Below, in pieces: positions 32,172 to 64,000 of a stretch of 64,000 nucleotides of DNA. Each line of letters opens with the position of its first letter. Position 1 is the stretch's first letter. Under the pieces are notes generated by a model that had not been told where the DNA came from, made no database searches, and saw nothing but the letters and a program-made list of their open reading frames with translations. The position numbers and the translations under genes were made by a program. Origin of the DNA: Obrimoposthia wandeli (lineage: Eukaryota); NCBI GenBank assembly GCA_977020255.1, contig CDROCS010002735.1, forward strand, positions 248,001 through 312,000, read 5' to 3'.

Positions 32172-33206
32172 TTAGTTATTTGACCTACTAACGGGCGTTA
32201 GTAATGCCTGCGCCTTTTCTCCAAACTCATCTTTGTGTTGTGCAACTTTTTGTAAGATTTTTTCAGCTCGCTTGCACAGTTTTAACTGCCGTAAACAAAG
32301 CCCTCTATAGTAGTTAATTTTAGAACTACTTTGTCCTAACTCTATTAATGCCTCTAAATGATTTAAAGCGACGGCTCCCTCACCCACTGCTAGCAAAGTA
32401 ATAGCTAAATCTAAGCGGCAATCATAGTTATTCGTCTCAAGTGCCAATTGCTGTTCAAAGTGAAAAACGGCTTTATTAAGCTGATTTTTAGCTAAATAGA
32501 CAAGCGCTAAATGTTTATGTGCATTACTATCTTTTTCATCAAGAAATAATGCCCGTTGCAACGCGTGCTCTGCCCTGATGTTTTCTTTAATTAAGAATAA
32601 GCTGATACCTAGGTAAACCCATGCTTGATTGATCGCTGAGCATTCGAAAATGGCGCTTGAGCTAATTTTAATCGCTTTTTGATACAAGCTAATTGCCTGA
32701 ATGTGCAAGCCTTGTAAACTGAGAGAAACACCCTGTTTTACCAGTAAATCAATATTATTAGGGGTAAGTTCTAGTGCTGTAGCCCAAGCTTGTTGTGCCT
32801 CGGGTAAATTACCAGTTAGTTGTAACATGCTGGCGAAAGTATCCCAACCTTGTACGCTTTCGCTATTAAGAGCTAACGCTTTGGTTAAATGCTCAAACCC
32901 TAGTACTGTTTTATTGGTTAGCACTAACACTTGTCCTAAATTAGTATGCGCCATACTAAAATAAGGATCGTAATTAATAGCTAACGTTAAGTGCTCTAAC
33001 GCTTTATCCCACCGCTGCTGTTGAGCATAAATAAAACCTAAATTATTATGTGCCAATGCGTTATTCGCGGCTAACGCTAGTGCATTGTGATAAGCCTGTT
33101 CCGCTTTTAACAGATTATTGTTCACATGGTATTTGACACCTAGCGTTATGTAGTTGTTTATTTTATTGCTCGTGTTTAAGCTATTCATCGCCGCTCCTGT
33201 TTCCAT
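32172..33206 (-). CDS. Tetratricopeptide-repeat protein
   Basis: Tandem TPR consensus (ALAHNNLGFIY, AHTNLGQVL, AWVYLGISL, AHKHLALVY, YYRGLCL). Its ATG overlaps the TAA of the DUF4157 gene at 33206. Confidence 0.88.
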   Translation of the reverse strand: METGAAMNSLNTSNKINNYITLGVKYHVNNNLLKAEQAYHNALALAANNALAHNNLGFIYAQQQRWDKALEHLTLAINYDPYFSMAHTNLGQVLVLTNKTVLGFEHLTKALALNSESVQGWDTFASMLQLTGNLPEAQQAWATALELTPNNIDLLVKQGVSLSLQGLHIQAISLYQKAIKISSSAIFECSAINQAWVYLGISLFLIKENIRAEHALQRALFLDEKDSNAHKHLALVYLAKNQLNKAVFHFEQQLALETNNYDCRLDLAITLLAVGEGAVALNHLEALIELGQSSSKINYYRGLCLRQLKLCKRAEKILQKVAQHKDEFGEKAQALLTPVSRSNN

Positions 33207-36200
33207 TATGCTATCCTGGCAATCAATCCTTTCATTAGCTGATCTGTATTAATATCTGGCACTTCAAATTCAACATCACTTACAGAGACATTAAAAGGCT
33301 CTCCTTCGTGGTAATGCACTGGCAGCTTGATACCAAAGCGATAATCTGATCCAAAAGTATAAGCGGCAAATTCCCAACGATTATCGTAAACACTCATGCC
33401 CAGTGCCCGCACATCAACATAGCCACCGATATCAAATGTAAAACTAGGTTGAGCACTAACCGCCACACTCGCGGTTAAATCAAGACCAGTAGCTGGTGTC
33501 CAATTCACGTTAACAGCCGCTTCAGCCGCCCCCGCTATCCCTAATGTGCCACCTATGTCTAGGCCCCCAGTGACGCTTGCTCCAGGTATACCCAAGCCTA
33601 TTCCAGCACGTACTGATAAGCGCAAGCCTGCATCTGTCGGAATATTTAAATGTGCTTCGCCGGTGATCGTGGTTTCTTCTTCTCGTGCGGGGTTGTAAAC
33701 AATACCTAAACGTAATTGATCTATAACGCCTGGACCAATGCCTGCTTGTGCAGATAGCCCTCCGCCAATTTCAGCGACAACTCCCGGAAAAAGAGGGGCT
33801 TGTACCGCGATATTAAATATTGATTTATCCAGCTGGTTACGGGCAAAGATCTCTAGTTCACTCGGCAATCCAATTTCACCGGTTACAGTAACTTCGCCAT
33901 TTGGAGAAAATTCAACACCTGCTTTGCCCTGTAGCCACGGCGCTATTTGTAATGTTAGCTCACCGCCGCCATAAACAATTAAAGGGTTACCCGCCGCTGC
34001 TTTTTCACTTAGCGCTCCCTCTTCAGTGACCGATCTATTGGTTACCCCTACTTGAATAGCTCCAGATAGCATCCCTCGTTCATAATCTGCCGCCACTTGT
34101 GCTGTAAAAGTACCATCATCATAACTGACTAATAAGTTTGAATTTAGCCCTGGGATATCCGGCTCTGCTTCACCAGAGGCTGCTAGTTCAAAACCGCTAC
34201 CATCTGCTTTTTCTATTAATGAAGCTGATATTACACCTCCTTTAATACCGGGAGTTTGCGATGAAAGCTCAAAGGTACCTTTAATAGCAAAGCCTTCTTC
34301 CTCACTTTGGGTTATCTCTAATCTGCCGCTTTCAACACCTGGCAATGCTAGTTGTGCTTCTCCTATTGCACTAAAGCCGTCCGTTTCACTGTATTCAACA
34401 TTGACGATTGCACTGCGAATACCTTTTATTTTCCCCTCAATAATGCTTAGCGTTCCGCCCATACTCCATTGCTCATCGGCATAACCCACCCGCACTTGTG
34501 CACTATTACCCTCACCAAAAATACGCTCATCAAAGTCAAATTCTCCACTGAGTTGTATATCACTCGAATCGTCAAAACCTGCTTCCCCATCTGCGGCTAA
34601 ACTCCCACTACCCAAATTGTCAATACCAAAATTTAGCAAGCCACTCATGAATAACCCACTGTTATTCATTCCTATTAATAAAGAGCTACTCCCTATACTA
34701 AAAGGTGCTGGTATTTTTATGTCTGCGGTCGAAAATTCCTTATAAATACTGAGCTCTTCACCGCTGAGAGAAAAGTTAATCGAGCTGTCTTTTATCAAGG
34801 GTAAAGTAGGTGTTATCAACCCTGTTATCATTATACCTCCAGCATTGATATCCACTTCCTCTACGCTTAATGGACTTAAACCAGGATAATCATTAAGCGA
34901 ATTTTTAACTTGCTTCTTAAGTGAATTTATATCAAATTTCCCACCCCAACTGATACCATCCATTGGTACAATATCCACAGGCCCCAAATCAGCAGGATCT
35001 ATTTGAGAGGGTAACCTTTGTTTTAATGCTACGCTTGGCACTTTTAAACGAATACTTCCCTGTTTGGTTTGTGCATCAAAATCAACTGCTACAATATCAA
35101 AGTTTCTCCTCTCTTGACCTCTAATCGAAGCTGTACTTAATTGATAATTATCAGCTCCTTCAAGCTTATTCAAGGCATAGTAGTAACCGCCGCTAGCACT
35201 TGGAAATATATGTATATTCTCGGCGTCTCCTGCCATGAAGCCGCTAGCATCAATTTCAGCCTGAGACATAGGTTCAAGCCCTTCTAAATGGACACCCGCT
35301 TTAATATGATCGCGGCTGTAGTATTGCTGTTTTCCTTTCACTGCGCTATAGGAACCAAGCTTTCCTCTGATAGGGTCAAAATATACAATATACTCGGATC
35401 TAGCAGTATCTATATCCGCAGGTGGATTAGCTACTTTATCTTGTATATGACTGACAAAAGAGGCCACTTTAGTACGTATTTCAGTACGTATCTCCCTTCC
35501 TGATTGACCATTGATAGGTCCATCCAGTAACCACATGTTTTCAAGTTTGTCCTCGCCTCCTGTTTGGTGTTCAACTTGGTGATCGACTTGAAACGCCGCG
35601 GGGGTACCGTCTCCTCGCCAAACAGGCCTTCGACAACGCTCTTGAATAGTGCGCTGGGTACCAAACAAGTAACTTTTGGATCTTTTGTACTTCAAGTAAT
35701 AAATAAATTTTCCCGCTTGTTCCGTACATTGTGCTCCGGCTAACTTTTCAACAACTTTAGCGTCCGCTTGTTCTTTAACATCGCTTTCCCAGATGGGTAT
35801 TTGAGTGGTATTGCGCTTCCCCCCTCCTGTTGATGCATTACGTCGCCAAGTAAGTAACCCATCAACTTTAATGCTAAACTGCGCTGCGCTATAAAAACCA
35901 TGCTTGAAAGTAGGCACTTTCAGGCCTATTATTTTTAACTGCTTACTGATTGTATCGATTTCTCCATCATTGTTTGAATAGCTTGCAGGTTTTGCTATTT
36001 CTTCACGCATCACCTTGGTATGTATCGTTTGGTTATTTTGTTGCACCACATGCGTAAGTTCATGTATTAGTAATTTTTTACCAGCAACACTTAATGGTGC
36101 AAACTCCCCCGCATTGAAAAAAACATCATTGCCTAAGGTAAAGGCCCTAGCGTTTAGCGCCTGGCATAACAAGGCTGATTCACTATCTGTGTGGATACTC

Positions 36201-36727
36201 ACCCGGGAAAAATCGTAAGACATCTGAGTAGCTAATTCGTCAACTAAGTTGCTACTGAGCGCTAGTCCCAAACCTTTTTTGGCTGCTATTTTGTTGGCAA
36301 CGTCATCGTTAATTAAATTGCCATCATTGTTTGAAGCTATATCACTGGCTTGTTGAACTTCATTATTGACACTCGGCGCTCTTTTAGCTTGCAACGATTG
36401 CGCCTGATCGCGCAAATCTTCAGGGGCTAACGCGCTTCTTTGAGCGGTGTCTATAAGATCAATATTGGCAGCTGAAGGCATGGCTATTACTTCTTCTGCT
36501 ACTTGATCTGCTTGTGTTTCTAAAGGATCATTTGCCTGACCGAGTTGTAATTTTTTTTGCAAATAAGCCGGCTGCAGTGTGCTACGTGAGACAGCCCTTG
36601 CGTCATCTTTTTGCTTCGCTTGATTAGCGGGTTGCGCGCTTTTGCGCGTTTGACTCAATCGATTATTAGCCGTGGGCTTAACGAGCGCTTGTGGCGCCAT
36701 TTTTGGCTTCCTTGTCTGTGTTTGCAT
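33206..36727 (-). CDS. DUF4157 (eCIS core domain) protein with internal HNH-like nuclease motif; candidate cargo/effector
   Basis: LQLGQANDPLETQADQVA...DFSRVSIHTD...ARAFTLGNDVFF...HELTHVVQQ (DUF4157 with HExxH); FQVDHQVEHQTGGEDKLENMWLLDGPIN (HNH-like); long Gly-rich beta-type C-terminal half. Confidence 0.8.
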   Translation of the reverse strand: MQTQTRKPKMAPQALVKPTANNRLSQTRKSAQPANQAKQKDDARAVSRSTLQPAYLQKKLQLGQANDPLETQADQVAEEVIAMPSAANIDLIDTAQRSALAPEDLRDQAQSLQAKRAPSVNNEVQQASDIASNNDGNLINDDVANKIAAKKGLGLALSSNLVDELATQMSYDFSRVSIHTDSESALLCQALNARAFTLGNDVFFNAGEFAPLSVAGKKLLIHELTHVVQQNNQTIHTKVMREEIAKPASYSNNDGEIDTISKQLKIIGLKVPTFKHGFYSAAQFSIKVDGLLTWRRNASTGGGKRNTTQIPIWESDVKEQADAKVVEKLAGAQCTEQAGKFIYYLKYKRSKSYLFGTQRTIQERCRRPVWRGDGTPAAFQVDHQVEHQTGGEDKLENMWLLDGPINGQSGREIRTEIRTKVASFVSHIQDKVANPPADIDTARSEYIVYFDPIRGKLGSYSAVKGKQQYYSRDHIKAGVHLEGLEPMSQAEIDASGFMAGDAENIHIFPSASGGYYYALNKLEGADNYQLSTASIRGQERRNFDIVAVDFDAQTKQGSIRLKVPSVALKQRLPSQIDPADLGPVDIVPMDGISWGGKFDINSLKKQVKNSLNDYPGLSPLSVEEVDINAGGIMITGLITPTLPLIKDSSINFSLSGEELSIYKEFSTADIKIPAPFSIGSSSLLIGMNNSGLFMSGLLNFGIDNLGSGSLAADGEAGFDDSSDIQLSGEFDFDERIFGEGNSAQVRVGYADEQWSMGGTLSIIEGKIKGIRSAIVNVEYSETDGFSAIGEAQLALPGVESGRLEITQSEEEGFAIKGTFELSSQTPGIKGGVISASLIEKADGSGFELAASGEAEPDIPGLNSNLLVSYDDGTFTAQVAADYERGMLSGAIQVGVTNRSVTEEGALSEKAAAGNPLIVYGGGELTLQIAPWLQGKAGVEFSPNGEVTVTGEIGLPSELEIFARNQLDKSIFNIAVQAPLFPGVVAEIGGGLSAQAGIGPGVIDQLRLGIVYNPAREEETTITGEAHLNIPTDAGLRLSVRAGIGLGIPGASVTGGLDIGGTLGIAGAAEAAVNVNWTPATGLDLTASVAVSAQPSFTFDIGGYVDVRALGMSVYDNRWEFAAYTFGSDYRFGIKLPVHYHEGEPFNVSVSDVEFEVPDINTDQLMKGLIARIA

Positions 36728-36779: not shown

Positions 36780-38882
36780 TTAATCCTTAACCCTTTGCCT
36801 ATATTGCTGTAGCTGCGCAGGAATCGCTTTTCCGGCTTTAGAATACTCATCAATTAAGCAGCTTAGTAGCACTTCTTTATCGATGGTATCCCCCGTTACG
36901 CCTTGATCAATTGCTGCTGCATTTAAAACAGCATTGCGAATATAACCACCAGCAAGCTCTGAGTGATGACTTAAAAATTGACAGAATTCATCCTTAGGTG
37001 CACGTGTGCCTAGGTGTTTCAGCCAAAGATGATAGCGCTGCTTTGCCTCTGGAATAGGAAATTCAATGACGGCATCTAAACGACGCGTAAAGGCGCTATC
37101 TATTCTGGTGCGCGCATTAGACGTTAAAATAACAATACCCGGATGATTTTCGATGCGACTGAGTAAGTAGTTGGTCAACATATTTGCAAAACGATCACCA
37201 CTTGATTCCCCTTGCGTTCTTTTACCAAAAAGTGCATCCGCTTCGTCAAACAGTAAAATAGCATCACCTACTGCAGCTTGATCAAGTGCAAGGCTGAGGT
37301 TTTTCTCGGTTTCACCAATATATTTATTCATTACGCTGGCTAAATCTAAACGAAACAAAGGAGCCGTTAAGGCAGTGGCGAGATAACTTGCTGCAAGAGT
37401 TTTGCCCGTGCCACTTTGTCCGTAAAACAATACTTTAACGCCTTTACTTGCGGTAATCTTTGCAGTACTGCCCAAGCCTTGATGCACGCTTTCTCGGCTT
37501 AAACAGCGACTAATCAATCTTTGTAACTGTTGTGCTACTTTGCTGGGGACCACTAAAGCATTGCTGTCAATTTGCCATTCTACTTTATGCGCCAGCTGCG
37601 CCAGTTTATTACCGCACATTGAGTATCTAGCATAGAGAATATCTTCAAGGCTAATCTTGCGCTGGTAGCGTTGGGCGTTAATCGCTGCTTCTTGCACTAT
37701 GATTCGAATGGCGTTTGCGGATAACAAGGCACTGCGCGCTAAAAAAAGTGCATCTAATATGCTGCTTGAATGAACTGATAATTGCTGTTTCCATTGTGCA
37801 TGGCGCTGCATCAAAGGAGCAGCACCAAGATTTATTTCAATTATTTTAGGCGAATCTACCTTTCCCTCACTGCCTAATAAAATAACAATGGGAATAGCAA
37901 AATGCTGTGCTAGCTTGATCTGTTGAATGCTATAACTCTCACTCGATGCTAGCTGCAACTCAACAACCGGTAGGTAATTGAAGTAATGACACGCTAATAA
38001 TGGCGAATCACTTGAGCTGAAATATTGGCTATCAAAATAGCGTAACTTCCGTTTTAAATGCTGGGCTATAAATAAGCTGATATTGTGAGCATCATCAGTG
38101 TCACCCCGTAATATCAATACATTGATAGTGCCTTTTTGTAGCAGTGTCATGATATTTGCAAGCTGTGCACACAAGGCGTCACTAATTAAATCGGCTTGGC
38201 ATTTGTCCGTTAAACTCGGCCGGGTTTCATAAGCTTGTAACCATTTGTAATCATTAGCTTTTATGTCATTATTATGTTCTGGCTTTTGATTACGAGCACT
38301 GGCCTGATGAGAATGGAGTATGAGCAGTGGCCAAAACTCATCCGCCAAGCTATAACTTGTTGTTACTAATACGTCTTCACTTGATATTTTTAGTATTTTT
38401 GCTGTCACTAATCTATGCTGTACTAGATGAATAATTGTCGTTTGCTTGAGTTGATCTAGAAAAATTGTCGATATTATTTTCAGTAATAAATGTGCGCTTA
38501 CTCGCGTACTCCCTATAGGTTTTTGTAGCTCGCTTAATGCTAAATTGATAGAAAAATTGTATTCTGATTCAGCTGTGAGTGCTAATACAAAGAACTCCCA
38601 AAGTTTTAAATCAAAATCATCAATCATCTTTTGTAAAGCGGGTTCAATTTGCAATTGATTAAAACTGATAGATTGCAGTTCATGTACGCCCTGCTCTACG
38701 GTTAAGTCCTTTATGCAGTTGTTTATATAAAATGACTGCAACAACTCTGCAAATATTGGCTCTGGTTTTGTTAGGACACTTAGTCCAAAGATCCCAATGA
38801 TGCCTTGTACCCACTCATTTATAGCCAGTTTAGTCGTCGGTTTTTGCTGTAAAGTTAACAAAGTTTCTAGGTTTTTACGCAT
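36780..38882 (-). CDS. eCIS AAA+ ATPase (Afp15/Pvc15-like)
   Basis: Walker A GQSGTGKT, RLDLASVMNKYIGETEKNL, Walker B LLFDEADALFGKR, AFTRRL. The ATG at 38882 overlaps the upstream stop and has an AAGG RBS (track start 38924). Confidence 0.9.
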   Translation of the reverse strand: MRKNLETLLTLQQKPTTKLAINEWVQGIIGIFGLSVLTKPEPIFAELLQSFYINNCIKDLTVEQGVHELQSISFNQLQIEPALQKMIDDFDLKLWEFFVLALTAESEYNFSINLALSELQKPIGSTRVSAHLLLKIISTIFLDQLKQTTIIHLVQHRLVTAKILKISSEDVLVTTSYSLADEFWPLLILHSHQASARNQKPEHNNDIKANDYKWLQAYETRPSLTDKCQADLISDALCAQLANIMTLLQKGTINVLILRGDTDDAHNISLFIAQHLKRKLRYFDSQYFSSSDSPLLACHYFNYLPVVELQLASSESYSIQQIKLAQHFAIPIVILLGSEGKVDSPKIIEINLGAAPLMQRHAQWKQQLSVHSSSILDALFLARSALLSANAIRIIVQEAAINAQRYQRKISLEDILYARYSMCGNKLAQLAHKVEWQIDSNALVVPSKVAQQLQRLISRCLSRESVHQGLGSTAKITASKGVKVLFYGQSGTGKTLAASYLATALTAPLFRLDLASVMNKYIGETEKNLSLALDQAAVGDAILLFDEADALFGKRTQGESSGDRFANMLTNYLLSRIENHPGIVILTSNARTRIDSAFTRRLDAVIEFPIPEAKQRYHLWLKHLGTRAPKDEFCQFLSHHSELAGGYIRNAVLNAAAIDQGVTGDTIDKEVLLSCLIDEYSKAGKAIPAQLQQYRQRVKD

Positions 38883-44679: not shown

Positions 44680-44708
44680 AAATGTGCTCCGAACAATTAA
44701 CCTAAACC

Positions 44709-47225: not shown

Positions 47226-47227
47226 AT

Positions 47228-57178: not shown

Positions 57179-57326
57179 AGCTTAGCCGCTCTTCCCGCTC
57201 ATTATTGATGGCAATAAACTCGGCTGTTTGCTGTTCCTGCTCATCACTTGCGTTCACCGCTAATGGCTGCTGTAATACCTGTGGCGCTGTAACTTGTGTT
57301 ACTAATTCGTTAATAATTAATGGCAT
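57171..57326 (-). CDS. Small Afp6-like protein (51 aa), not in the ORF track
   Basis: Hand translation: MPLIINELVTQVTAPQVLQQPLAVNASDEQEQQTAEFIAINNEREERLSFD*. GAGG RBS; its TAA overlaps the TTG of the hub gene; the MPxxIxELV start recalls Afp6-family proteins. Confidence 0.7.
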   Translation of the reverse strand: MPLIINELVTQVTAPQVLQQPLAVNASDEQEQQTAEFIAINNEREERLSFD

Positions 57327-57359: not shown

Positions 57360-58157
57360 TCAACTAGGTTTAACGGTATCCACTAAATCGGTAATGGTTT
57401 TGAAAGCGCCATTAATTTGGCTACCGAGCAATTTTTCTTTCCCCCCGATCACACCTTTCACTACGTCATTAATGGTCGGCACTGAGAGATTAAAATTATT
57501 AATGGCGCGTGGGTTTTCAATACCATTAAATAGTGCTATTTCACGCCATTTTTTTGGGTCTTTACCGTTTTCTGCCAGCGTTTGCGACACACCTTTATTG
57601 CTGGCGGTAAAGTTGGCAACGGTTCGCGGCGGCGCAACCACATCAATTGTTTCAAATTGATAGCGGTTTTCTTTCAACACTAAAGCCAAATTTGAGCGCA
57701 ATGGGATCCCTTCAGGAGAGAAAAAATCAAGAGTTTCATTAAAGCTACTCAACATGCCTACAAAAGCAAAGGCACCCCATTGAAAACGACACACCATAGG
57801 TGCAAGTAGGCCATCAGCACTACTTTGAGGTTGCATAAACTTGCTAGCAATCGCTTTTGTTAATAAACGCACATCTGAATTAGCCGTATGCTTGGCACTT
57901 CTATTGCCAATAGTTATGTCTCTAGAAACGCTGGTGTCAAATATTAAATTAACACTTAAAGACGATTCGCTTTTATCGACATATTGCGCTGCGTTATCTT
58001 CAGATTTTGACTTCGCATCCGCTTTTAAAGTGTTTGATAAGCTAATTTTTAAGCTCTCTGGATTAAACTGAACTAAAATATATTTACTTTCATCGGGCTC
58101 AATTGATCCTTCGACTATCGGGATTAACACCGCTTTAGCTAGCGAAATATCGGCCAT
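57360..58157 (-). CDS. Afp7-like tube initiator / CIS tube-type protein with degenerate LysM
   Basis: LVQFNPESLKIS, LSVNLIFDT, CRFQWG, FFSPEGIPLRSNLALVLKE, KWREIALFNGIENPR. Confidence 0.85.
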   Translation of the reverse strand: MADISLAKAVLIPIVEGSIEPDESKYILVQFNPESLKISLSNTLKADAKSKSEDNAAQYVDKSESSLSVNLIFDTSVSRDITIGNRSAKHTANSDVRLLTKAIASKFMQPQSSADGLLAPMVCRFQWGAFAFVGMLSSFNETLDFFSPEGIPLRSNLALVLKENRYQFETIDVVAPPRTVANFTASNKGVSQTLAENGKDPKKWREIALFNGIENPRAINNFNLSVPTINDVVKGVIGGKEKLLGSQINGAFKTITDLVDTVKPS

Positions 58158-58168
58158 TAAACTGCTCC

Positions 58169-58651
58169 CTATGGCTTGCGCCGTGTTAGTTGTAAGCCTT
58201 CATGTACCAAATGCAATTCTTCAATTGCTACGGCACTCGCATTGGCAGATAAATCTGCGCTCTTAAATTTAACTGCCATGGCATTTTCTATATGCCAGCT
58301 TAAAATGGGTTTTACACTACTGGTTGTGTTACTAAAATTGTGGTCAAAAACTTCTATCAATCCTTGCATGCGATAAGCGTAATTAGCTTGACGAGTGCTG
58401 ATATCTATCCATGCATATAAATCATCAATTTCTGTGATGCCGCGCTTGAGTACCAAGGTTGGGAAGGTTGTTTTGCCTACAAGTTGTACATCTCCCCAGT
58501 TACGTCCACCCTCTTTGATAGTTTTCGCCGACATTGAGATTTCCAGCCCGCTAATATCACTAAAAGCGCCCTGCGCAACCAGCGCTTTAGCTGCATCATC
58601 GGTAACATTAAATAAGCTAACTTTGAATCTAAAGGGAATAAATTCAGACAT
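58169..58651 (-). CDS. Tail tube protein 2 (gp19-like, Afp5-like)
   Basis: GAFSDISGLEISM...IKEGGRN...LVLKRGI...VKFKSADLSANASAVAIEELHLVHEGL. Confidence 0.9.
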   Translation of the reverse strand: MSEFIPFRFKVSLFNVTDDAAKALVAQGAFSDISGLEISMSAKTIKEGGRNWGDVQLVGKTTFPTLVLKRGITEIDDLYAWIDISTRQANYAYRMQGLIEVFDHNFSNTTSSVKPILSWHIENAMAVKFKSADLSANASAVAIEELHLVHEGLQLTRRKP

Positions 58652-60170
58652 TCTTTACTTCCAATTCATTAGCCGTTAAATTTAGTTTGATACTGTCTAT
58701 CGAAAAAGCAGGGGAAAATAGAATTTCAAAGATCATGTTATCCTCGCTATGCTGCTGCTCAATATTGAATGCTTGCTCAGCACTCGCGCCTTGTAGAGCG
58801 CCGGCAGTGTAAAGATCATTAAAAAATTTATTAAGTATCATCAATGGCCGCGGGTCTTGCGGATCAGATTGAAAAATAAAATCTAAGCCTAGATTGCCTA
58901 AGCTTCGTCTTAGCCAGCCAATAAAACGGGCCATTTCACCACGGCGCGAATACAGCGTATTTTGTTGCATTACTCCGGCACTTAAGCGTTCATTATCTAA
59001 ACTCAACTGACCTTTTGTGGAATTAAGTAAACCGATACCGAGTGTTTTAGCATTGAATAGAGTCGGGTTTTGCTGCATATCTGGAAAGGTTTTATATCCT
59101 GTGGCCAATGCCATCCCTGCAATAGAGCGCCACGCTCCTAAAAGCAGCGTAGTGGTTAACATTTTTTTAGCAATCATGGCACTAGCTGAACGAAGTTGCC
59201 CAGATTTGCTTTGTAAATACGGATAAATTAACTGCACTCGATGCAGTTCACTTGCCAATACTTCGGTTTGTAACTTATTTATTGCATGCAGTGCAGTTTG
59301 AGACATTTTTAGCTGCTGATTTTCTCGCTCATCGGCAAAAGGCATGCTGTAAATCCAATGTATATCGGCTCTCAAAGCTGCTATTTTTTGCAGTACTGGT
59401 ACTAACACATCAGTAAATTCAAATGTGGCTGGCTGTTTCAGTAATTCTTTAAAGTAGCGGCGTTCTCTATGATCATCTTTATAATCAAAGCTGCAAGGCA
59501 AAAACTGGGGTGTGATGTTTGCCAAACGCATTCTGGGGATATGGTTCAACACAGTCGGGATTTGAAGTCGCTCCAAATCAGGCATCACAATAAGACTGGC
59601 ACTTTGAACACTCAATGCATTGTGTAGTGATGAATGAAAGCCGTGATTATCGCTATCTAAAACATCATCACTGAGCTGCGGTAAAAAACCTGCTTGCGCT
59701 AAATGTTGATCAACACTGACTATCCAGAGCTTGTATTTTGTATTAGTACTACTGATGTCTGTGTTAGCTTGCGCTTGAAAGAAGTCTTCTACTGCCAAGG
59801 GTAACCAAGCTTGATTACCACCTAGCGTTGTTTGATAAAGAGTAGGCTCTTGAGTGTGTAAAAATATCTGTTGAAACTGCTGTAAACTAGAAATTGGAAT
59901 AGGCAAGCCATATAGCAAATGGCGATAGTCCTGAGCTTGTAATGATATTTCTAGCTCGTGCAGTAAGCTCGCTTTTAATGCAGTTTCTATCACGCCAAGG
60001 CGTTTCTCAAAGCCAAGTTGCGCTATTTCAGCCACAACAGTTCCGGAATTAATCAAGTAAGCTAGATCAACTTCACCAGGACAGTGGCCCAACATAATCA
60101 TTTGAGCCGTATCCTCCTGTGTATTTTGTAGCTGATCCAGATATATAGCGCTGTGATTAAAACTTAACAT
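58644..60170 (-). CDS. Divergent second tail-sheath-like protein
   Basis: Sheath-like remnants: ISSLQQFQQIF, WLPLAVEDFF, and a C-terminal RFIGWLRRSL...FIFQ...FFNDLYTAGALQGASAEQAFNIE. The canonical MPxYxAPGVY start is absent. Confidence 0.6.
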   Translation of the reverse strand: MLSFNHSAIYLDQLQNTQEDTAQMIMLGHCPGEVDLAYLINSGTVVAEIAQLGFEKRLGVIETALKASLLHELEISLQAQDYRHLLYGLPIPISSLQQFQQIFLHTQEPTLYQTTLGGNQAWLPLAVEDFFQAQANTDISSTNTKYKLWIVSVDQHLAQAGFLPQLSDDVLDSDNHGFHSSLHNALSVQSASLIVMPDLERLQIPTVLNHIPRMRLANITPQFLPCSFDYKDDHRERRYFKELLKQPATFEFTDVLVPVLQKIAALRADIHWIYSMPFADERENQQLKMSQTALHAINKLQTEVLASELHRVQLIYPYLQSKSGQLRSASAMIAKKMLTTTLLLGAWRSIAGMALATGYKTFPDMQQNPTLFNAKTLGIGLLNSTKGQLSLDNERLSAGVMQQNTLYSRRGEMARFIGWLRRSLGNLGLDFIFQSDPQDPRPLMILNKFFNDLYTAGALQGASAEQAFNIEQQHSEDNMIFEILFSPAFSIDSIKLNLTANELEVKNV

Positions 60171-60235: not shown

Positions 60236-60691
60236 CTAACTCTCTTCAATATTTTCAATAGACAGCACTAACTCTTCCATTGCTACATCACCACCTCCTT
60301 TCGCAGCGAGTGTTGGGCCTGTCCATTTAATAGGAATTGCGCCGCGCAGTATCCAAGTGACCACAACAGCATCTCTGTTTTCACTCATCAGCTTGACTGT
60401 GACATCACGTTTGCTCGCCATTGATCCAGCTCTGGTTTCTTTCAGCCATTGCCATATATTCTCAGAGCCTGTGACACCTCGTTTAAATGTGATATCACCT
60501 GATTTGTGGATGCCGGGGATTTTTGTCACGTAATTATTCAATGAGTTTCCCACGCGATATTCAGCCACAGTCACTTCGGCACTCAGCCCTGACACTTCTG
60601 AAAAACCTGCTAAAACTTCTGCTCCTTGACCGGATTCTAATTCAACTAAAAAGTTAAAGGCTGAATAAGGTATGTCTCTAAATGTTGGCAT
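60236..60691 (-). CDS. Tail tube protein 1 (gp19-like, Afp1-like, TIGR02241-type)
   Basis: PYSAFNFLVE, AGFSEVSGL, EYRVGN, KIPGIHKSGDITFKRGV, PIKWTGP, DVAMEELVL. Confidence 0.95.
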   Translation of the reverse strand: MPTFRDIPYSAFNFLVELESGQGAEVLAGFSEVSGLSAEVTVAEYRVGNSLNNYVTKIPGIHKSGDITFKRGVTGSENIWQWLKETRAGSMASKRDVTVKLMSENRDAVVVTWILRGAIPIKWTGPTLAAKGGGDVAMEELVLSIENIEES

Positions 60692-60708
60692 GTGTTATCT
60701 CCCTCTGA

Positions 60709-62913
60709 CTAAGTATCAGCCGTTTTTTGGCCGATTCTAAAGATGACAAATTCCGCAGGTCGTAGGGGTGCAACGCCAACTTCGCAAACTAAACGGCCAT
60801 TATCAATGTCGTTTTGTGTCATGGTATTTCGATCGCATCGTACAAAAAATGCGGCTTCAGGACTTGCACCTAATAAGTGGCCACTGCTCCATTCGTTGAA
60901 CAAGAAGTTACTAATAGTGATGCGTACATTGGCCCACAAAGCTTCACCGTTTGGCTCAAATACTGCCCATTGCGTGCCTTTTTCGATAGAGCGCTCCAAA
61001 TACAAGAAATAGCGGCGTACATTCACGTACTTCCATTCAGGATCGCTAGATAAAGTACGTGCGCCCCAAACACGGTGACCCCTACCTGGAAATGACCGCA
61101 AACAGTTAATAGCATTAGGGTTTAATAACTCTTGTTGGAATTTATTAATCGTTTGATTAAAGCTTAATGCCCCCAACACCACCGTATTTGCCGGTGCTTT
61201 GTGTACACCGCGCTCTACATCAGTGCGCGCGTAAACCCCTGCCATAAAGCCACAAGGCGGTAGCGCTAGTGAAGCTGATTTTCCTGAAGGATCTGAAGCC
61301 ACAACCCAAGGATAATAAAGTGCTAATCGGCTATCATCAAAGTTATCTCGCAGCGCTCTTATTTCAGAAATAGCCATATCTTTTCGACAATCGACTAACC
61401 CAATACGATAGCGCATTTTCAAACAGTGATTAAGCATGGCGTTGACTATTGACTGATGAGTAGTTGCAGTACTGGCAGCTGCATTTGGCGTCATCACGAT
61501 GGAGATATCTTCAATATCTTCAAGTGAAATTAATCCGGTGTTGCCATTTATCTCATCCATTTCCCCAATGTAATCTACATCGGTTAATATTTTTCCATCA
61601 TCGCCGCCTTGTAAGCTAATGATATAACGAGGACTTGCAAAAGAACCGCTGCTGGGTATTAATTGTGCACTATTGACTTTAAATAGTTCAAACATAGCCA
61701 AATACACAGCGGACGCTGTCGCTAAAGCACCTGTACTGCAAGCGACGGGTAAGCTCAGTGCATCGATTTTTTTACTAGGGTGTTGTGTCAACATATTGGC
61801 TAAAGAACTGCTATTAATAGCGCTTGGATCTAAGCTTAAGCCGCTGATTTGATAAATAGTTTCACCAACCCCAGCCACACCTTCGACATCGCTTGGAGTT
61901 AAAGTACGGCGTATCACATTCATTGAAAAGTTACGTTTGATCACCAATGATTTTGCACCTGCAGCGAGTAACAGCTCACTAAGGTCAAAGCTAACATTTA
62001 CCACATTATTATTAAGTTCTTTAAGCACCTCAAATTTAGTACCGCTGGCATCAATTGAACCCCATAAAAATGTTGAGTCGTCTAGGTCTGAAAAAAACGG
62101 TTTAATACTTGCCGTGAGCACTAATCTGGCATTGGTTCCCGATTCTAATGCACCACTGGCGGGTTGTGATGCAATTAACTGTGTCAATTTAAAAGTTAAT
62201 GAATTTAACGAAGTCGCACTGATTTTATCGCCAAGGTCTGCAATAGCCACTTGTGCGACAGAGCTGTCATCATTAATCACATCAGCCATTGCACCGGCCA
62301 ATACATAGGCATCTTCTTCTAAATCAAAACGGACCATCACGTGTAGTTGCTTTAATGGAAAGCCACTGTGTACCCCCGCCACGTCAAAGACGCTGTCATT
62401 TACGGCGGCATCAATCGTCAACAGTGCCATTTGGCCATCTTGCAAAATTGGATTAACAATCGTTCTTAGTAGATTTTGCGAGTCTTCCCAAAGTATTTCT
62501 AAATCAAGGTTGCCACCGCTGCCTGCAAAGCGGGCATTAAAGGCTAAATCGTCTTGCACCGCAGAGGCTTTCGCCGCGCTGCTACCTACTCCGTATTCGT
62601 CAATGCTGTTGCCACCATTGATCACGCGTGTCATGTACAACTGTTTACCACCATTATCAAAAAAAGCTCTGGCAGCTAAAGCACTATAATTTAGCTGCGT
62701 TGCACCTTGAGCATCAATAAAACTGAGCGTTTGTGCTGAACCAAACGTTTTTTCAAATTGAGAATAGGTAGTCATCACTTCTGGCGCGCCTCTCACCGGT
62801 CCAAATTTAGCAGGCCCCACCATGGCGGCAACGCTTGTGCCAACACCTTCGATGGATTTTGATCTAAAACTGGTCTCTTCGATGTAGACACCGGGAGCTA
62901 GATATTCCGGCAT
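60709..62913 (-). CDS. Contractile tail sheath protein (gp18-like, Afp2/3/4-like)
   Basis: MPEYLAPGVYIEETS, ARAFFDNGG, LALYYPW, LPPCGFMAGVYARTDVERGVHKAPAN, RVWGARTLS..WKYVNVRR, WAVFEPN, GVAPLRPAEFVIFRI. Confidence 0.97.
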   Translation of the reverse strand: MPEYLAPGVYIEETSFRSKSIEGVGTSVAAMVGPAKFGPVRGAPEVMTTYSQFEKTFGSAQTLSFIDAQGATQLNYSALAARAFFDNGGKQLYMTRVINGGNSIDEYGVGSSAAKASAVQDDLAFNARFAGSGGNLDLEILWEDSQNLLRTIVNPILQDGQMALLTIDAAVNDSVFDVAGVHSGFPLKQLHVMVRFDLEEDAYVLAGAMADVINDDSSVAQVAIADLGDKISATSLNSLTFKLTQLIASQPASGALESGTNARLVLTASIKPFFSDLDDSTFLWGSIDASGTKFEVLKELNNNVVNVSFDLSELLLAAGAKSLVIKRNFSMNVIRRTLTPSDVEGVAGVGETIYQISGLSLDPSAINSSSLANMLTQHPSKKIDALSLPVACSTGALATASAVYLAMFELFKVNSAQLIPSSGSFASPRYIISLQGGDDGKILTDVDYIGEMDEINGNTGLISLEDIEDISIVMTPNAAASTATTHQSIVNAMLNHCLKMRYRIGLVDCRKDMAISEIRALRDNFDDSRLALYYPWVVASDPSGKSASLALPPCGFMAGVYARTDVERGVHKAPANTVVLGALSFNQTINKFQQELLNPNAINCLRSFPGRGHRVWGARTLSSDPEWKYVNVRRYFLYLERSIEKGTQWAVFEPNGEALWANVRITISNFLFNEWSSGHLLGASPEAAFFVRCDRNTMTQNDIDNGRLVCEVGVAPLRPAEFVIFRIGQKTADT

Positions 62914-63040
62914 AGCGAAATCCTCTTTTTTATTGAATTAAACAGGATGCATATTTTGGCTATTTAATGACAAATCAGGCATCTGTCAGCTTTTCTTAGA
63001 TACCCCGCTTCAATTGAGCATAACTTACCCAAAGGGCATG

Positions 63041-63091
63041 GTAGCTGAGGTTTATAATGCTGGTTAAAAAACGATTCAAAAGCTCAGCTAC
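63041..63091. promoter_or_regulatory. Inverted repeat in the leader upstream of the sheath gene
   Basis: GTAGCTGAGGTTT (63041-63053) versus AAAGCTCAGCTAC (63079-63091): 12/13 complementary. Confidence 0.45.
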
Positions 63092-63220
63092 AACAATATT
63101 ACCCGTGACAGGGCTTCACTGATTCCACTATTTGAACGGTTTGCTCCTTACTTTATTATCACTCGGGACCTCATGCAGAGCTCTGATTGATGTTTAATTA
63201 ATGCGTGCTTGCTTATTAAT

Positions 63221-64000
63221 TTATATGATCGCCTTTATAACGATACTTAAATGATTTTCGCTTTGTAAGCGCTGCACTTGCGCCACCGTATATTTGAAAT
63301 TCAAAAGTGCACTTTCACTGCTATCTTGATCGGCGTCTTCTAATACATTGAATGGCGTAAAATGATTAATATTTGCTATTTCAACGCTTTGAGCAGGGTG
63401 AGCGATGACGCTTAATTGCGCATCATATTCTGTATTCATTGAGTTTTTGTCAGGTGCAGGAAGGCGGTTCAATGCGAGTTGTAATTCACCATTCTCATCG
63501 CACTGCCCTTTAAAAATCAATAATGGTTCTTCATTGCCAATATCAATTTGTACTGTGATCACGGCCCAACTTGCTGGTGTGCCATCTTCATAAATAACAT
63601 GTCCTAAAATTCCTCCTGCGCCACTAAAACCACTACCCATTGGCGATCGATAAAGATTAACCGTATGTTTACTTTGCGCGGTAGTGGTTAATACAAGCAG
63701 TAGTGGATTATAAATACCTTTAAGATCAGAGACTGCCAAAGTGATCGAATAAGGTACTTTTGCCGCACTTATATGTTCAAACTTATCCATGATGTATAAA
63801 TTTACAAGCGCTGAATCTGATGAATACGTATTACTAACAACCGTTTGAGTGATGCCTGGTATATTTCTTTGCAATACCAACATATTGTCTTTCTCGATTA
63901 ATTTTAAATTGCTAGGAGCGTTTAAGATTTGAAACTGCAAATTAGTGCTCTTTACTAAGGTACGTTGCTCGCTTTGAAAACCACTGCCTTCTGACCATTG
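63221..64000 (-). CDS. eCIS-associated hypothetical protein (possible carboxypeptidase-regulatory-like beta sandwich); reading frame open to the window edge
   Basis: The frame stays open upstream of the track's TTG (63940) to position 64000 (QWSEGSGFQSEQRTLVKSTNLQF...), so the start may lie outside the window. GHVIYEDGTPASWAVITV resembles the CarboxypepD_reg-like segment; lies just before the sheath gene. Confidence 0.6.
   Translation of the reverse strand, partial: QWSEGSGFQSEQRTLVKSTNLQFQILNAPSNLKLIEKDNMLVLQRNIPGITQTVVSNTYSSDSALVNLYIMDKFEHISAAKVPYSITLAVSDLKGIYNPLLLVLTTTAQSKHTVNLYRSPMGSGFSGAGGILGHVIYEDGTPASWAVITVQIDIGNEEPLLIFKGQCDENGELQLALNRLPAPDKNSMNTEYDAQLSVIAHPAQSVEIANINHFTPFNVLEDADQDSSESALLNFKYTVAQVQRLQSENHLSIVIKAII

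What the first reader, a model, noticed from the sequence alone, without database searches (positions are those of the whole stretch)
32172..64000. A >31-kb headless contractile injection system of atypical architecture in a marine gammaproteobacterium
Seen: sheath, tube, divergent sheath, tube, Afp7-like, Afp6-like, hub, gp5, unknown, gp25, baseplate J, tail protein, three fibre-type proteins, unknown, tape-measure-like, AAA+ ATPase, DUF4157 and TPR, all on one strand with many start/stop overlaps. No head, packaging, integrase or lysis genes, and no TssJLM/ClpV. Known: the AAA+ ATPase plus DUF4157 plus Afp7 combination marks eCIS (Afp, PVC, MAC, AlgoCIS, tCIS, Streptomyces CIS). Inference: the split spike, TIGR02243-type wedge, missing PAAR and extra large accessory proteins make this different from the characterised gammaproteobacterial Afp/PVC/MAC systems, so it is probably an uncharacterised eCIS subtype.
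Basis: partly seen in the sequence, partly recalled or inferred. Interest (0 to 1): 0.88.

Follow-up and report, generated by a model that had tools for sequence, protein, structure and literature searches.

The report
Phage-tail injection system, catalogued subtype IIb
This is a real, nearly complete gene cluster for a headless phage-tail-like injection machine, but its "unusual" features are the hallmarks of a widespread, already catalogued and still unstudied subtype (IIb), so it is a new member of a known kind.

Summary
The cluster is real. Twenty-one co-oriented genes on the minus strand (64000 down to 32172) encode a contractile injection system (CIS). They comprise sheath, two tubes, a second divergent sheath, tube initiator, two-gene spike, gp25, one baseplate-J (TIGR02243), Afp12-like, three proteins with a shared Cis13-like N-terminus, AAA+ ATPase, a 1173-aa DUF4157 protein and a TPR protein. 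The window cuts the 5' end; in relatives the DUF4255 cap gene lies just upstream.

The features called atypical (split spike, no PAAR, single Afp11, small Afp6-position ORF, divergent Afp12/13, no recognisable tape measure) match the published definition of dbeCIS subtype IIb (Chen 2019). The same gene order recurs in Methylomonas methanica MC09, an Oceanospirillaceae MAG and about 80 metagenomic loci.

The closest solved relatives are the Streptomyces cytoplasmic CIS and a haloarchaeal T6SS-like CIS, not Afp/PVC/MAC. An extracellular mode is therefore inferred, not shown. I found no experimentally characterised IIb system.

The one unexplained element is a conserved ~600-aa protein. Its start overlaps the gp5 stop (ATGgTAA), it matches no known fold, and it has a nearly invariant C-terminal transmembrane helix (about 1,280 representative homologues). 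It sits near where other subtypes encode PAAR.

Verdict: new member of a known, uncharacterised kind; moderate interest.

The parts
63221..64000 (-). 3' part of a conserved ~276-288-aa gene of unknown function. It lies between the cap gene and the sheath gene, and the ORF runs off the window.
   Evidence: The frame is open to base 64000. Homologues of 276, 288 and 273 aa sit directly downstream of Pvc16_N in L001, L003 and L004. No Pfam, NCBIfam or PHROG hit.
60709..62913 (-). Main sheath (734 aa; Afp2/Cis2 equivalent) with a large inserted domain
   Evidence: PF04984 + PF17482. The best PDB matches are the Streptomyces Cis2 sheaths 8bky/8bl4 (1e-101) and 9ezm (1e-97), against about 1e-50 for Afp/PVC/tCIS/AlgoCIS. 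More than 2000 homologues.
60236..60691 (-). Inner tube protein (151 aa)
   Evidence: Phage_T4_gp19 2.5e-33; TIGR02241 and CIS5/CIS1 families.
58644..60170 (-). Divergent sheath paralogue (508 aa), probably a baseplate-proximal sheath layer like Afp4/Pvc4
   Evidence: Profile A2 hits only CIS sheaths. The AF2 model gives Foldseek top hits 9gtp Cis2, Pvc4 and Afp4.
58169..58651 (-). Second tube-family protein (160 aa; Afp5-like adaptor)
   Evidence: Phage_T4_gp19 4e-25; TIGR02241.
57360..58157 (-). Tube initiator (265 aa; Afp7/Cis7-like)
   Evidence: PF19266 CIS_tube 2.3e-21.
57171..57326 (-). Conserved 51-aa ORF in the Afp6/Cis6 ('plug') size class. The assignment rests on position only.
   Evidence: It is conserved (51-60 aa) at the same place in L001, L003, L004 and the P0350 locus. 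No PDB similarity.
56090..57178 (-). Spike hub, gp27/gpD half of a split VgrG (362 aa)
   Evidence: Phage_GPD. NF033848 VgrG_rel positions 53-351 of 547. A separate ORF in all relatives.
55390..56031 (-). Spike gp5 OB-fold half of the split VgrG (213 aa)
   Evidence: Phage_base_V 2.8e-18. VgrG_rel positions 373-539. Its own AAGGAG ribosome-binding site follows a 58-nt spacer.
53606..55396 (-). Subtype-specific 596-aa protein with a nearly invariant C-terminal transmembrane helix. Its start overlaps the gp5 stop (ATGgTAA). Function unknown. The longest ORF would start at 55459.
   Evidence: KD 2.65 hydrophobic segment. A1 conservation. AF2 helix at 560-593. No PDB or BFVD fold match. 1283 representative homologues, and 121 of 122 full-length ones have the C-terminal TM motif. 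Junction sequence.
53185..53565 (-). gp25/TssE-like baseplate wedge protein (126 aa)
   Evidence: PF04965 2.4e-21; TIGR03357.
50848..53052 (-). Single Afp11/Cis11 baseplate-J protein (734 aa)
   Evidence: Baseplate_J. TIGR02243 at 212 bits, above its cut-off. The only PDB hit is S. coelicolor Cis11, 9gtp_1K, at 4.9e-35.
48192..50750 (-). Afp12/Cis12-like baseplate protein (852 aa)
   Evidence: Tail_P2_I. CIS12_fam 1.9e-20 and TIGR02242.
47228..48181 (-). Fibre-like protein 1 (317 aa) with a Cis13-like N-terminal anchor
   Evidence: CIS13_fam 9.6e-8. HHalign to the other two families gives prob 96-97.5%.
44709..47252 (-). Fibre-like protein 2 (847 aa) with a Cis13-like N-terminal anchor
   Evidence: CIS13_fam 2.7e-7; HHalign.
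42607..44745 (-). Fibre-like protein 3, N-terminal half (712 aa)
   Evidence: Weak CIS13_fam hit. HHalign prob 98.9% to fibre-like protein 2. Fused with the next gene in most relatives.
40586..42517 (-). Fibre-like protein 3, C-terminal half (643 aa), a separate ORF here
   Evidence: It maps to residues ~650-1215 of single ~1200-aa ORFs in L013, L017, L029-L032.
38875..40551 (-). Conserved 558-aa protein in the Afp14 position, immediately upstream of the ATPase. It has conserved N- and C-terminal domains, a variable middle and the invariant motif GLDI[ND]PxWLPWLG.
   Evidence: A3/A4 alignments. 185 metagenomic relatives, always upstream of the AAA gene. No PDB, Pfam, NCBIfam or PHROG hit.
36780..38924 (-). 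AAA+ ATPase (714 aa; Afp15/Cis15 equivalent)
   Evidence: PF00004 1.3e-24 at residues 498-623. Conserved position.
33206..36727 (-). 1173-aa DUF4157 (eCIS_core) protein. It has a polar N-terminal ~155 aa, a DUF4157 domain with HExxH, an HNH-like motif near residue 381 and a conserved Gly-rich C-terminal ~570 aa. Probable cargo.
   Evidence: eCIS_core 1.7e-24. Composition and motifs. Full-length homologue in M. methanica at 35% identity. A5 has an invariant HExxH. Sub-threshold HNH hits in 5 of 10 homologues. The architecture equals that of the AlgoCIS cargos Cgo1/Cgo2.
32172..33206 (-). TPR protein (344 aa). Its start overlaps the DUF4157 gene stop by 1 nt. Last gene of the cluster.
   Evidence: TPR families. 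Conserved after the DUF4157 gene in L005, L007, L013, L020, L030-L032 and L039. A convergent rhodanese gene follows at 31237-32088.

Best explanation
This is a chromosomal gene cluster for a contractile injection system of eCIS lineage II. Its gene content matches dbeCIS subtype IIb.

Shown by homology:
- The genes encode a complete phage-tail-like particle without a head. It has a main sheath plus a divergent sheath paralogue, a tube plus a tube adaptor and an Afp7-like initiator, and a spike made of separate gp27-like and gp5-like proteins.
- The baseplate has gp25, one Afp11 and an Afp12-like protein. Three peripheral proteins share a Cis13-type N-terminal domain.
- An AAA+ ATPase, a DUF4157 protein and a TPR protein complete the set.

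Inferred:
- The particle assembles in the cytoplasm.
- The AAA+ ATPase loads the 1173-aa DUF4157 protein into the tube through its polar N-terminal region, as in AlgoCIS. This protein is possibly an HNH-type nuclease with a large beta-rich C-terminal domain.
- The three Cis13-like proteins bind a target surface.
- Sheath contraction drives the tube and spike into the target.

Least certain:
- Delivery is most likely from released particles (extracellular mode), because fibre-like proteins are present.
- The conserved transmembrane protein whose start overlaps the gp5 stop probably sits on or next to the spike in place of PAAR.
For: - Domain assignments. Divergent sheath.
- Seven of the eight Chen 2019 'core backbone' components are in the window. 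The eighth (Afp16 cap, Pvc16_N) lies directly upstream in every relative examined (definition).
- IIb criteria from Chen 2019 are met: split Afp8, no PAAR, single Afp11, Afp12/Afp13-like present.
- The whole 21-gene order is conserved in M. methanica MC09, an Oceanospirillaceae MAG and about 80 metagenomic loci.
- The cargo architecture (polar N-terminal region, DUF4157, large C-terminal domain) equals that of AlgoCIS Cgo1/Cgo2, whose loading needs the N-terminal region and the AAA+ Alg15. DUF4157 is linked to eCIS toxins.
- The fibre-like proteins share an anchor domain, and one homologue carries a chitin-binding CBM_5_12 module. The fibre-less Streptomyces system is the cytoplasmic one.
- No head, terminase or integrase genes in the flanks.
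Against: - No experiment exists for any IIb system, and mode of action cannot be read reliably from sequence (statement in PMC12998442).
- The closest solved relatives are a cytoplasmic and a membrane-anchored CIS.
- A universally conserved transmembrane protein in the spike/baseplate module is unexpected for a free soluble particle.
- No lysis genes for release lie in the cluster.
- The IIb assignment rests on gene content, not on a tree with labelled dbeCIS references, which I could not obtain.
- The tape-measure and Afp6 assignments are positional only.
- The HNH hits are below threshold.
Confidence: 0.58

Rival explanations
1. Same machine, but cell-associated. The conserved tail-anchored protein whose start overlaps the gp5 stop tethers the spike or baseplate to the producer's inner membrane. 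The system then fires outward on contact, in a T6SS-like mode as in the haloarchaeal IIa CIS, T6SS-iv or the thylakoid-anchored CIS.
For: - The C-terminal TM helix is nearly invariant in 121 of 122 full-length representatives. It always lies between the gp5 and gp25 genes, with a 7-nt start/stop overlap with gp5.
- Haloarchaeal lineage-II CISs use a dedicated membrane protein and act by contact. Streptomyces CIS needs the membrane protein CisA to fire.
- There are no lysis genes in the cluster.
Against: - The known anchors (Hbor_38620 with six TM helices; bitopic CisA) are unrelated in architecture, and no fold match was found.
- No component that would span the periplasm and outer membrane of a Gram-negative cell is visible in the cluster.
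- Three fibre-like proteins suggest free particles that must find a target.
- The membrane-anchored Bacteroidales CISs, which the authors liken to T6SS-iv, are reported to lack typical tail fibres.
Confidence: 0.25
2. A cytoplasmic CIS like the Streptomyces and Roseiflexus systems. Particles stay inside the producer and fire into its own membrane under stress, causing regulated cell death. The DUF4157 protein acts on the producer.
For: - Sheath and Afp11 are most similar to S. coelicolor Cis2/Cis11.
- The membrane protein could play the CisA role.
- The DUF4157 protein and the TPR protein are conserved core genes rather than variable cargo.
Against: - Subtype IId, to which those systems belong, has a contiguous VgrG, PAAR and no Afp12/13. 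This cluster differs on all three points.
- The Streptomyces particle has no fibres, whereas this cluster has three fibre-like genes.
Confidence: 0.12
3. Remnant of a myovirus prophage tail module, or an R-type tailocin, rather than a dedicated injection system.
For: Sheath, tube, gp25, baseplate J and P2-I-like domains are shared with phage tails.
Against: - No hit to any PHROG family for ten of the cluster proteins.
- The eCIS-specific AAA+ ATPase, DUF4157 and (in relatives) the Pvc16_N cap are present.
- No head, packaging, integrase or lysis genes and no tRNA occur in the flanks.
- The same 21-gene set is conserved across classes of bacteria.
Confidence: 0.03

Closest known systems
dbeCIS subtype IIb loci (Chen et al. 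2019, Cell Rep; PMC6899500), catalogued bioinformatically only
   Same: Every published IIb hallmark that could be tested is met: Afp8 split into gp27 and gp5 ORFs, PAAR/Afp10 absent, a single Afp11, divergent Afp12 and Afp13 present, no recognisable Afp14, a small ORF in the Afp6 position, and several conserved genes without known domains.
   Different: Nothing was found that departs from the description. Placement on the dbeCIS tree could not be checked. In this sub-clade the third fibre-like protein is split into two ORFs.
Methylomonas methanica MC09 locus, CP002738.1 about 2,653,911-2,685,289 (uncharacterised)
   Same: Gene-for-gene the same order from the cap to the TPR gene. This includes the TM protein, the split third fibre-like protein, an 1180-aa DUF4157 protein (35% identity over its full length) and the TPR protein.
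   Different: The proteins are 35-55% identical. The sigma-70-like gene seen upstream in the two closer relatives is absent there.
Streptomyces coelicolor cytoplasmic CIS (subtype IId; PDB 8bky, 8bl4, 9gtp, 9gts)
   Same: It is the closest solved sheath (1e-101) and the only solved Afp11 homologue (4.9e-35). Both are lineage II, have DUF4157-associated proteins and depend on a membrane protein.
   Different: IId has a contiguous VgrG, PAAR and no Afp12/13-type fibres. The Streptomyces sheath is ~534 aa against 734 aa here. CisA is bitopic with a periplasmic domain, unlike the tail-anchored protein here.
Halogeometricum borinquense T6SS-like CIS (subtype IIa; PDB 9ezm)
   Same: Lineage II, a split Afp8, DUF4157 effectors, and a sheath match at 1e-97.
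   Different: IIa has two Afp11 copies and PAAR. It lacks cis6. Its anchor is a 6-TM protein encoded outside the core.
AlgoCIS of Algoriphagus machipongonensis (subtype Ib) and Afp/PVC (Ia)
   Same: The general particle plan is shared. The cargo design (disordered N-terminus, DUF4157, C-terminal domain) is loaded via the AAA+ ATPase, and Cgo2 has 1228 aa against 1173 aa here. These systems also have multiple sheath paralogues (Afp2-4).
   Different: Sheath similarity is only about 1e-47 to 1e-50. [quoted passage not shown]

Membership tests
eCIS/CIS superfamily (core backbone of Chen 2019) | Afp1/5 tube, Afp2/3/4 sheath, Afp7, Afp8, Afp9, Afp11 and Afp15 homologues clustered together | tested here: met
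   Pfam and NCBIfam hits for all seven. Definition.
eCIS/CIS superfamily (core backbone of Chen 2019) | Afp16 cap (DUF4255 / Pvc16_N) | tested here: inconclusive
   It is not inside the window, because the cluster is cut at base 64000. It is present two genes upstream of the sheath in L001, L003, L004 and the P0350 locus.
eCIS/CIS superfamily | No head, packaging or T6SS membrane-complex genes adjoining the cluster | tested here: met
   Window 1-32000 holds housekeeping genes only. The upstream flank of the 89-90%-identical MAG also holds housekeeping genes. The window's own upstream flank was not seen.
dbeCIS subtype IIb | Afp8 split into separate gp27-like and gp5-like ORFs | tested here: met
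   The 362-aa GPD ORF and the 213-aa Phage_base_V ORF map to positions 53-351 and 373-539 of VgrG_rel. They are separated by a 58-nt spacer with a ribosome-binding site. The split is conserved in relatives.
dbeCIS subtype IIb | Afp10/PAAR absent (the only subtype lacking it) | tested here: met
   No PAAR family hit in any of the 21 proteins, and no spare ORF of 50 aa or more in the cluster. A PAAR gene elsewhere in the genome cannot be excluded.
dbeCIS subtype IIb | Single Afp11 copy (IIa and IIc have two) | tested here: met
   Only window 50848-53052 hits Baseplate_J/TIGR02243.
dbeCIS subtype IIb | Divergent Afp12 and Afp13 present | tested here: met
   CIS12_fam/Tail_P2_I on the 852-aa protein. 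CIS13_fam N-terminal matches on three proteins, far below the equivalog cut-offs and therefore 'divergent'.
dbeCIS subtype IIb | Afp6 retained | tested here: inconclusive
   A conserved 51-60-aa ORF lies between the Afp7-like and gp27-like genes. No sequence similarity to anything in the PDB.
dbeCIS subtype IIb | Placement in the IIb clade of the Afp-protein tree | not testable with these tools
   No labelled dbeCIS sequences or supplements are available. Only relative similarity to solved structures could be used.
Afp/PVC (subtype Ia) and MAC (Ib) | Contiguous VgrG, PAAR and an Afp14 tape measure | tested here: not met
   The spike is split, there is no PAAR, and nothing with detectable Afp14 similarity was found. 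The sheath is far closer to lineage-II structures.
Streptomyces-type cytoplasmic CIS (subtype IId) | Contiguous VgrG, PAAR present, Afp12/13 absent | tested here: not met
   All three differ here. Definitions.
Canonical T6SS (i-iii) | TssJLM membrane complex, TssBC sheath, ClpV | tested here: not met
   None of these appear among the 50 window ORFs scanned with Pfam. Afp11 and the DUF4157 protein in the window, and the cap gene in relatives, mark the locus as eCIS-type.

The most novel reading that the evidence does not exclude
Subtype IIb systems may have replaced the PAAR tip by a dedicated ~600-aa protein with a novel fold. Its start overlaps the gp5 spike gene's stop, and its nearly invariant C-terminal transmembrane helix gives the machine a membrane-coupled step. 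That step would either tether the spike or baseplate to the producer's inner membrane (a fourth, independent route to a T6SS-like or membrane-triggered CIS in Gram-negative bacteria) or insert into the target membrane as part of the spike. This would be a mechanism not described for any characterised CIS.
Probability: 0.3. Interest if true: 0.7.

Novelty: new member of a known kind. Interest (0 to 1): 0.4.

Why it matters
CISs are being developed as programmable protein-delivery devices. Their modes of action (extracellular, cytoplasmic, thylakoid-anchored or cell-membrane-anchored) have each time turned out to be unpredictable from sequence.

In the literature I could search, subtypes IIb and IIc have no studied representative. 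This locus and its relatives in culturable bacteria (Methylomonas methanica MC09, Cellvibrio sp. PSBB006, Halomonas aestuarii, Aliikangiella marina) define a clean 21-22-gene set for such a study.

They also point to one concrete unknown: the conserved transmembrane protein that sits where other subtypes have PAAR. As an individual locus, however, it adds no new category.

Tried and rejected
- **Pseudogene spike.** I asked whether the split VgrG was a frameshift. It is not: both ORFs and the spacer with a ribosome-binding site are conserved in relatives down to remote ones.
- **Sheath paralogue by BLASTP.** The 508-aa protein against the main sheath gave nothing. Only the profile search and the structure comparison showed it is a sheath.
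- **Fold of the TM protein.** The AF2 model was searched against the PDB and BFVD with no match at E <= 0.001. No Pfam, PHROG, NCBIfam or PADLOC hit either.
- **Tape measure.** The 30-sequence profile of the 558-aa family found nothing credible in the PDB or Pfam.
- **Afp6.** The profile of the 51-aa ORF against the PDB gave only chance hits.
- **Toxin domain of the DUF4157 protein.** Full-length Pfam and PDB searches found nothing beyond eCIS_core. The excised motif region gave only sub-threshold HNH hits.
- **Receptor-binding domains.** Pfam on 34 fibre-like homologues gave one CBM_5_12 only.
- **Source genome.** The genome-contig scan found only the related MAG, not the window's own genome.
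- **Subtype labels.** The supplements of Chen 2019 are not held. The eCIStem tables list no Methylomonas, Halomonas or Marinobacterium eCIS, so they could not be used as labelled references.
- **RNA and mobility signals.** Rfam and tRNA scans of the window found nothing. Consensus promoter and terminator scans at the cluster ends were at chance level.

Full report
**1. What is there**

Region 32172-64000 holds 21 co-oriented ORFs on the minus strand. Intergenic gaps are short and seven pairs overlap start to stop. Reading 5' to 3' (from 64000 downwards), the genes are:

| Window coordinates | Product | Evidence |
|---|---|---|
| 63221-64000 | Partial ORF that runs off the window | |
| 60709-62913 | 734-aa sheath (PF04984 + PF17482) | |
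| 60236-60691 | gp19-type tube, 151 aa | |
| 58644-60170 | 508-aa protein with no family hit | |
| 58169-58651 | Second gp19-type protein, 160 aa | |
| 57360-58157 | CIS_tube/Afp7-like protein, 265 aa | |
| 57171-57326 | 51-aa ORF | |
| 56090-57178 | GPD/gp27-like hub, 362 aa | |
| 55390-56031 | gp5 OB-fold protein, 213 aa | |
| 53606-55396 | ~596-aa protein with no family hit | |
| 53185-53565 | gp25 | |
| 50848-53052 | Baseplate_J protein, 734 aa; passes the TIGR02243 cut-off | |
| 48192-50750 | Tail_P2_I/CIS12-like protein, 852 aa | |
| 40586-48181 | Four ORFs of 317, 847, 712 and 643 aa | |
| 38875-40551 | 558-aa ORF | |
| 36780-38924 | AAA+ ATPase, 714 aa | |
| 33206-36727 | 1173-aa eCIS_core/DUF4157 protein | |
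| 32172-33206 | TPR protein, 344 aa | |

The rest of the window (1-32000) is ordinary chromosome. It carries an aquaporin, GGDEF/EAL proteins, the leucine-catabolism cluster, phosphoglucose isomerase, urate catabolism, a nitroreductase, a DUF2157/DUF4401 pair and a rhodanese. It has no tRNA and no Rfam match.

**2. Points sharpened or corrected**

(a) The 508-aa protein is a sheath paralogue.
- BLASTP against the main sheath finds nothing.
- A 38-sequence profile hits only CIS sheaths in the PDB, led by Pvc4 at 8.7e-7, then All3325, Afp3 and Afp2.
- Its AlphaFold model (pLDDT 80, pTM 0.84) matches the S. coelicolor Cis2, Pvc4 and Afp4 sheaths at E about 1e-11 and probability 1.0.

(b) The 317-, 847- and 712-aa proteins share a homologous N-terminal ~100 residues. 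Profile-profile probabilities are 96-99%, with E from 3e-9 to 2.5e-17. This domain weakly matches NCBIfam CIS13_fam.

(c) The 643-aa 'unknown' is the C-terminal half of the third of these proteins.
- In most relatives one ~1200-1300-aa ORF covers both halves.
- The two-ORF form is shared with the MAG, M. methanica and three metagenomic loci.

(d) The cluster is truncated by the window. In the four relatives where that region is available, the order upstream of the sheath is Pvc16_N/DUF4255 cap, then a ~275-288-aa protein, then the sheath. The window's partial ORF corresponds to that ~275-288-aa protein. A sigma-70-region-2-like gene lies further upstream in two of them.

(e) 'Afp6-like' and 'tape-measure-like' rest on position only.
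- The 51-aa ORF is conserved but matches nothing.
- The 558-aa family has conserved N- and C-terminal domains, a variable middle and an invariant GLDI[ND]PxWLPWLG motif.
- It finds nothing in the PDB, Pfam, NCBIfam or PHROGs.

**3. It is not atypical; it is subtype IIb**

Chen et al. 2019 (PMC6899500) split eCIS loci into Ia, Ib and IIa-IId. They describe IIb as follows:
- It is the only lineage-II subtype that keeps afp6 and the only subtype lacking afp10/PAAR.
- It has a single afp11, whereas IIa and IIc have two.
- Its afp8 is split into gp27 and gp5 ORFs, whereas IId has a contiguous gene.
- It has divergent afp12 and afp13, which are absent from most IIc and IId loci.
- Like lineage II in general, it has no afp14 homologue and carries two or three subtype-specific genes without known domains.

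The window matches each testable point:
- The spike halves map to positions 53-351 and 373-539 of one VgrG_rel model. They are separated by 58 nt carrying an AAGGAG ribosome-binding site, and the split is conserved in all relatives examined.
- No PAAR hit or spare ORF exists.
- Only one Baseplate_J gene is present.
- Afp12- and Afp13-like proteins are present but score far below the equivalog cut-offs.

I could not place the locus on a labelled tree, because the dbeCIS supplements are not held. Membership therefore rests on gene content, and I estimate it at about 0.8.

**4. How common it is**

- The sheath has more than 2000 homologues at 50% identity or above. Named sources include Cellvibrio, Aliikangiella, Halomonas, Marinobacterium, Thalassolituus, Methylomonas, Aromatoleum, Rhodocyclaceae and Thiohalocapsa.
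- The nearest genome is an Oceanospirillaceae MAG (isolate 9NakV-11) with 89-90% identical proteins.
- The full order from cap to TPR is the same in that MAG and in Methylomonas methanica MC09, CP002738.1.
- A metagenome scan seeded with the 558-aa protein returned 185 relatives. In the 80 loci fetched, the recurrent order is Afp12, ~300-aa, ~560-850-aa, ~1200-aa, ~550-aa, AAA, DUF4157 and, in the closer relatives, TPR.
- A remote homologue of the TM protein sits in the same arrangement.
- Oddly, the eCIStem genus table lists 0 of 16 Methylomonas, 0 of 95 Halomonas and 0 of 12 Marinobacterium genomes as eCIS-positive. That pipeline was deliberately stringent, so this subtype seems to be under-detected there.

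**5. Closest characterised systems**

- By sequence, the sheath is closest to the Streptomyces CIS structures (8bky/9gtp and 8bl4/9gts, about 1e-101) and to the Halogeometricum borinquense contracted sheath (9ezm, 1e-97). Afp, PVC, tCIS and AlgoCIS score about 1e-47 to 1e-50.
- The only solved Afp11 homologue is S. coelicolor Cis11 (4.9e-35).
- Those two relatives are a cytoplasmic CIS that kills its producer under stress and needs the membrane protein CisA (IId), and a membrane-anchored, contact-dependent 'archaeal T6SS' (IIa).
- Literature searches found characterised systems only in Ia, Ib, IIa and IId. I found none for IIb.

**6. The unexplained component**

The ORF after gp5 most likely starts at 55396. 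There its ATG overlaps the gp5 stop (ATGgTAA) 10 nt after an AGGAG. The same 7-nt overlap is seen in L001, L003, L004 and the P0350 locus.

- The 596-aa product has no family hit.
- A 30-sequence AlphaFold model is confident over most of the chain (pLDDT 74, with 204 residues at 90 or above). It ends in a single long helix at residues 560-593.
- Foldseek finds nothing in the PDB or BFVD.
- A profile search of 1.84 billion representatives finds 1283 members (902 at 1e-10 or better), typically 500-650 aa.
- Of the full-length members among the best 150, 121 of 122 carry a C-terminal hydrophobic segment. The motif is nearly invariant: CSFSIP[IV][IV]T[IL]CA[MF]I[LV]L...LL[ND]..F.W[IL]P.

A membrane helix conserved to this degree, encoded immediately after the gp5 spike gene with overlapping start and stop codons, in the one subtype that lacks PAAR, suggests a specific role. 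It could be part of the spike or a membrane tether. I cannot decide between the two.

**7. Probable cargo**

The 1173-aa protein has four regions:
- a polar, low-hydrophobicity N-terminal ~155 residues;
- a DUF4157 domain with an invariant HExxH (H222, E223, H226);
- a middle region;
- a Gly-rich C-terminal ~570 residues, which is the best-conserved part.

This is the architecture of the AlgoCIS cargos Cgo1 and Cgo2. Their disordered N-terminus is the loading signal and the AAA+ Alg15 mediates loading into the tube lumen (bioRxiv 10.64898/2026.05.27.728243). DUF4157 is generally linked to eCIS toxins (Geller 2021).

A motif VDHxxExQxGG...NxxLL...NxxSG is conserved in 12 of 16 homologues. It gives sub-threshold HNH (PF01844) hits in 5 of 10 excised segments (E 0.016-0.18), plus a weak IscB hit. 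A nuclease activity is a reasonable but unproven guess.

Unlike typical variable cargo, this protein is conserved at full length, together with the TPR gene that overlaps it by 1 nt, out to Methylomonas.

**8. Mechanism**

Shown by homology: the genes specify a headless contractile tail with two sheath species, a tube, an adaptor and an initiator, a two-piece spike, a gp25/Afp11/Afp12 wedge and three peripheral proteins with a shared anchor domain.

Inferred:
- The AAA+ ATPase loads the DUF4157 protein.
- The peripheral proteins bind a target. One homologue has a chitin-binding module.
- Sheath contraction delivers the spike, tube and cargo.

My estimates for the mode of delivery are:

| Mode | Probability | Main reason |
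|---|---|---|
| Extracellular | ~0.58 | Fibre-like proteins are present, and the fibre-less Streptomyces system is the cytoplasmic one |
| Membrane-anchored or contact-dependent | ~0.25 | The conserved TM protein |
| Cytoplasmic self-lysis | ~0.12 | Nearest solved relatives |
| Prophage remnant | ~0.03 | Shared phage-tail domains only |

Specialists state that sequence alone is unreliable for this question (PMC12998442).

**9. Verdict**

The finding is a genuine, well-preserved CIS locus. I rate novelty as 'new member of a known kind' and interest at about 0.4. That interest is carried mainly by the lack of any characterised IIb system and by the conserved transmembrane protein whose start overlaps the gp5 stop.

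Noticed in passing
window 62914-63220: The spacer upstream of the sheath gene is 307 nt here, against 41-118 nt in relatives (L001, L003, L004). It has no Rfam hit and no consensus promoter on the coding strand. It could hold a regulatory element or a small insertion.
   Followed up: partly
L001 7198-7767; L003 1-234: In the two closest relatives a sigma-70 region-2-like gene (189 aa, weak Pfam hit) and a 56-60-aa ORF lie just upstream of the cap gene. This is a candidate dedicated regulator. It is absent at that place in Methylomonas methanica.
   Followed up: no
Geller 2021 supplement, file 9, against L004/L005: The eCIStem genus table lists 0 of 16 Methylomonas, 0 of 95 Halomonas and 0 of 12 Marinobacterium genomes as eCIS-positive. 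M. methanica MC09 nevertheless carries the full locus, and Halomonas and Marinobacterium sheath homologues exist. This subtype seems to be under-detected by that pipeline.
   Followed up: partly
window 40586-44745, against L013 5417-9091: The third fibre-like protein is a single ~1200-1300-aa ORF in most relatives. It is split into two ORFs (712 + 643 aa, with an 89-nt gap) in the window, the MAG, M. methanica, L007, L008 and L021.
   Followed up: yes
window 1971-3464, 11156-13327, 13539-15902: Three c-di-GMP turnover proteins lie within 16 kb: DSBA-GGDEF, SBP_bac_3-GGDEF and GAF-GGDEF-EAL. The latter two sit in a low-GC stretch (0.31-0.34 against ~0.40-0.44 elsewhere).
   Followed up: no
window 4223-11046: A complete leucine/isovalerate catabolism (liu-type) cluster. 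It encodes acyl-CoA dehydrogenase, carboxyltransferase, enoyl-CoA hydratase, biotin carboxylase and HMG-CoA lyase.
   Followed up: no
window 20285-26853: A purine/urate catabolism cluster. It encodes a xanthine/uracil permease, a polysaccharide-deacetylase-family protein (probably allantoinase PuuE), OHCU decarboxylase, allantoicase, ureidoglycolate lyase and a membrane urate oxidase (Urate_ox_N).
   Followed up: no
window 28241-30936: A DUF2157 membrane protein is followed, with a 4-nt overlap, by a DUF4401 + GDYXXLXY protein. This is a conserved pair of unknown function next to the cluster, on the opposite strand.
   Followed up: no
L007-L086: Among 34 fibre-like homologues only one carries a recognisable domain (CBM_5_12, chitin or carbohydrate binding). 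The C-terminal parts of this family are otherwise uncatalogued.
   Followed up: partly
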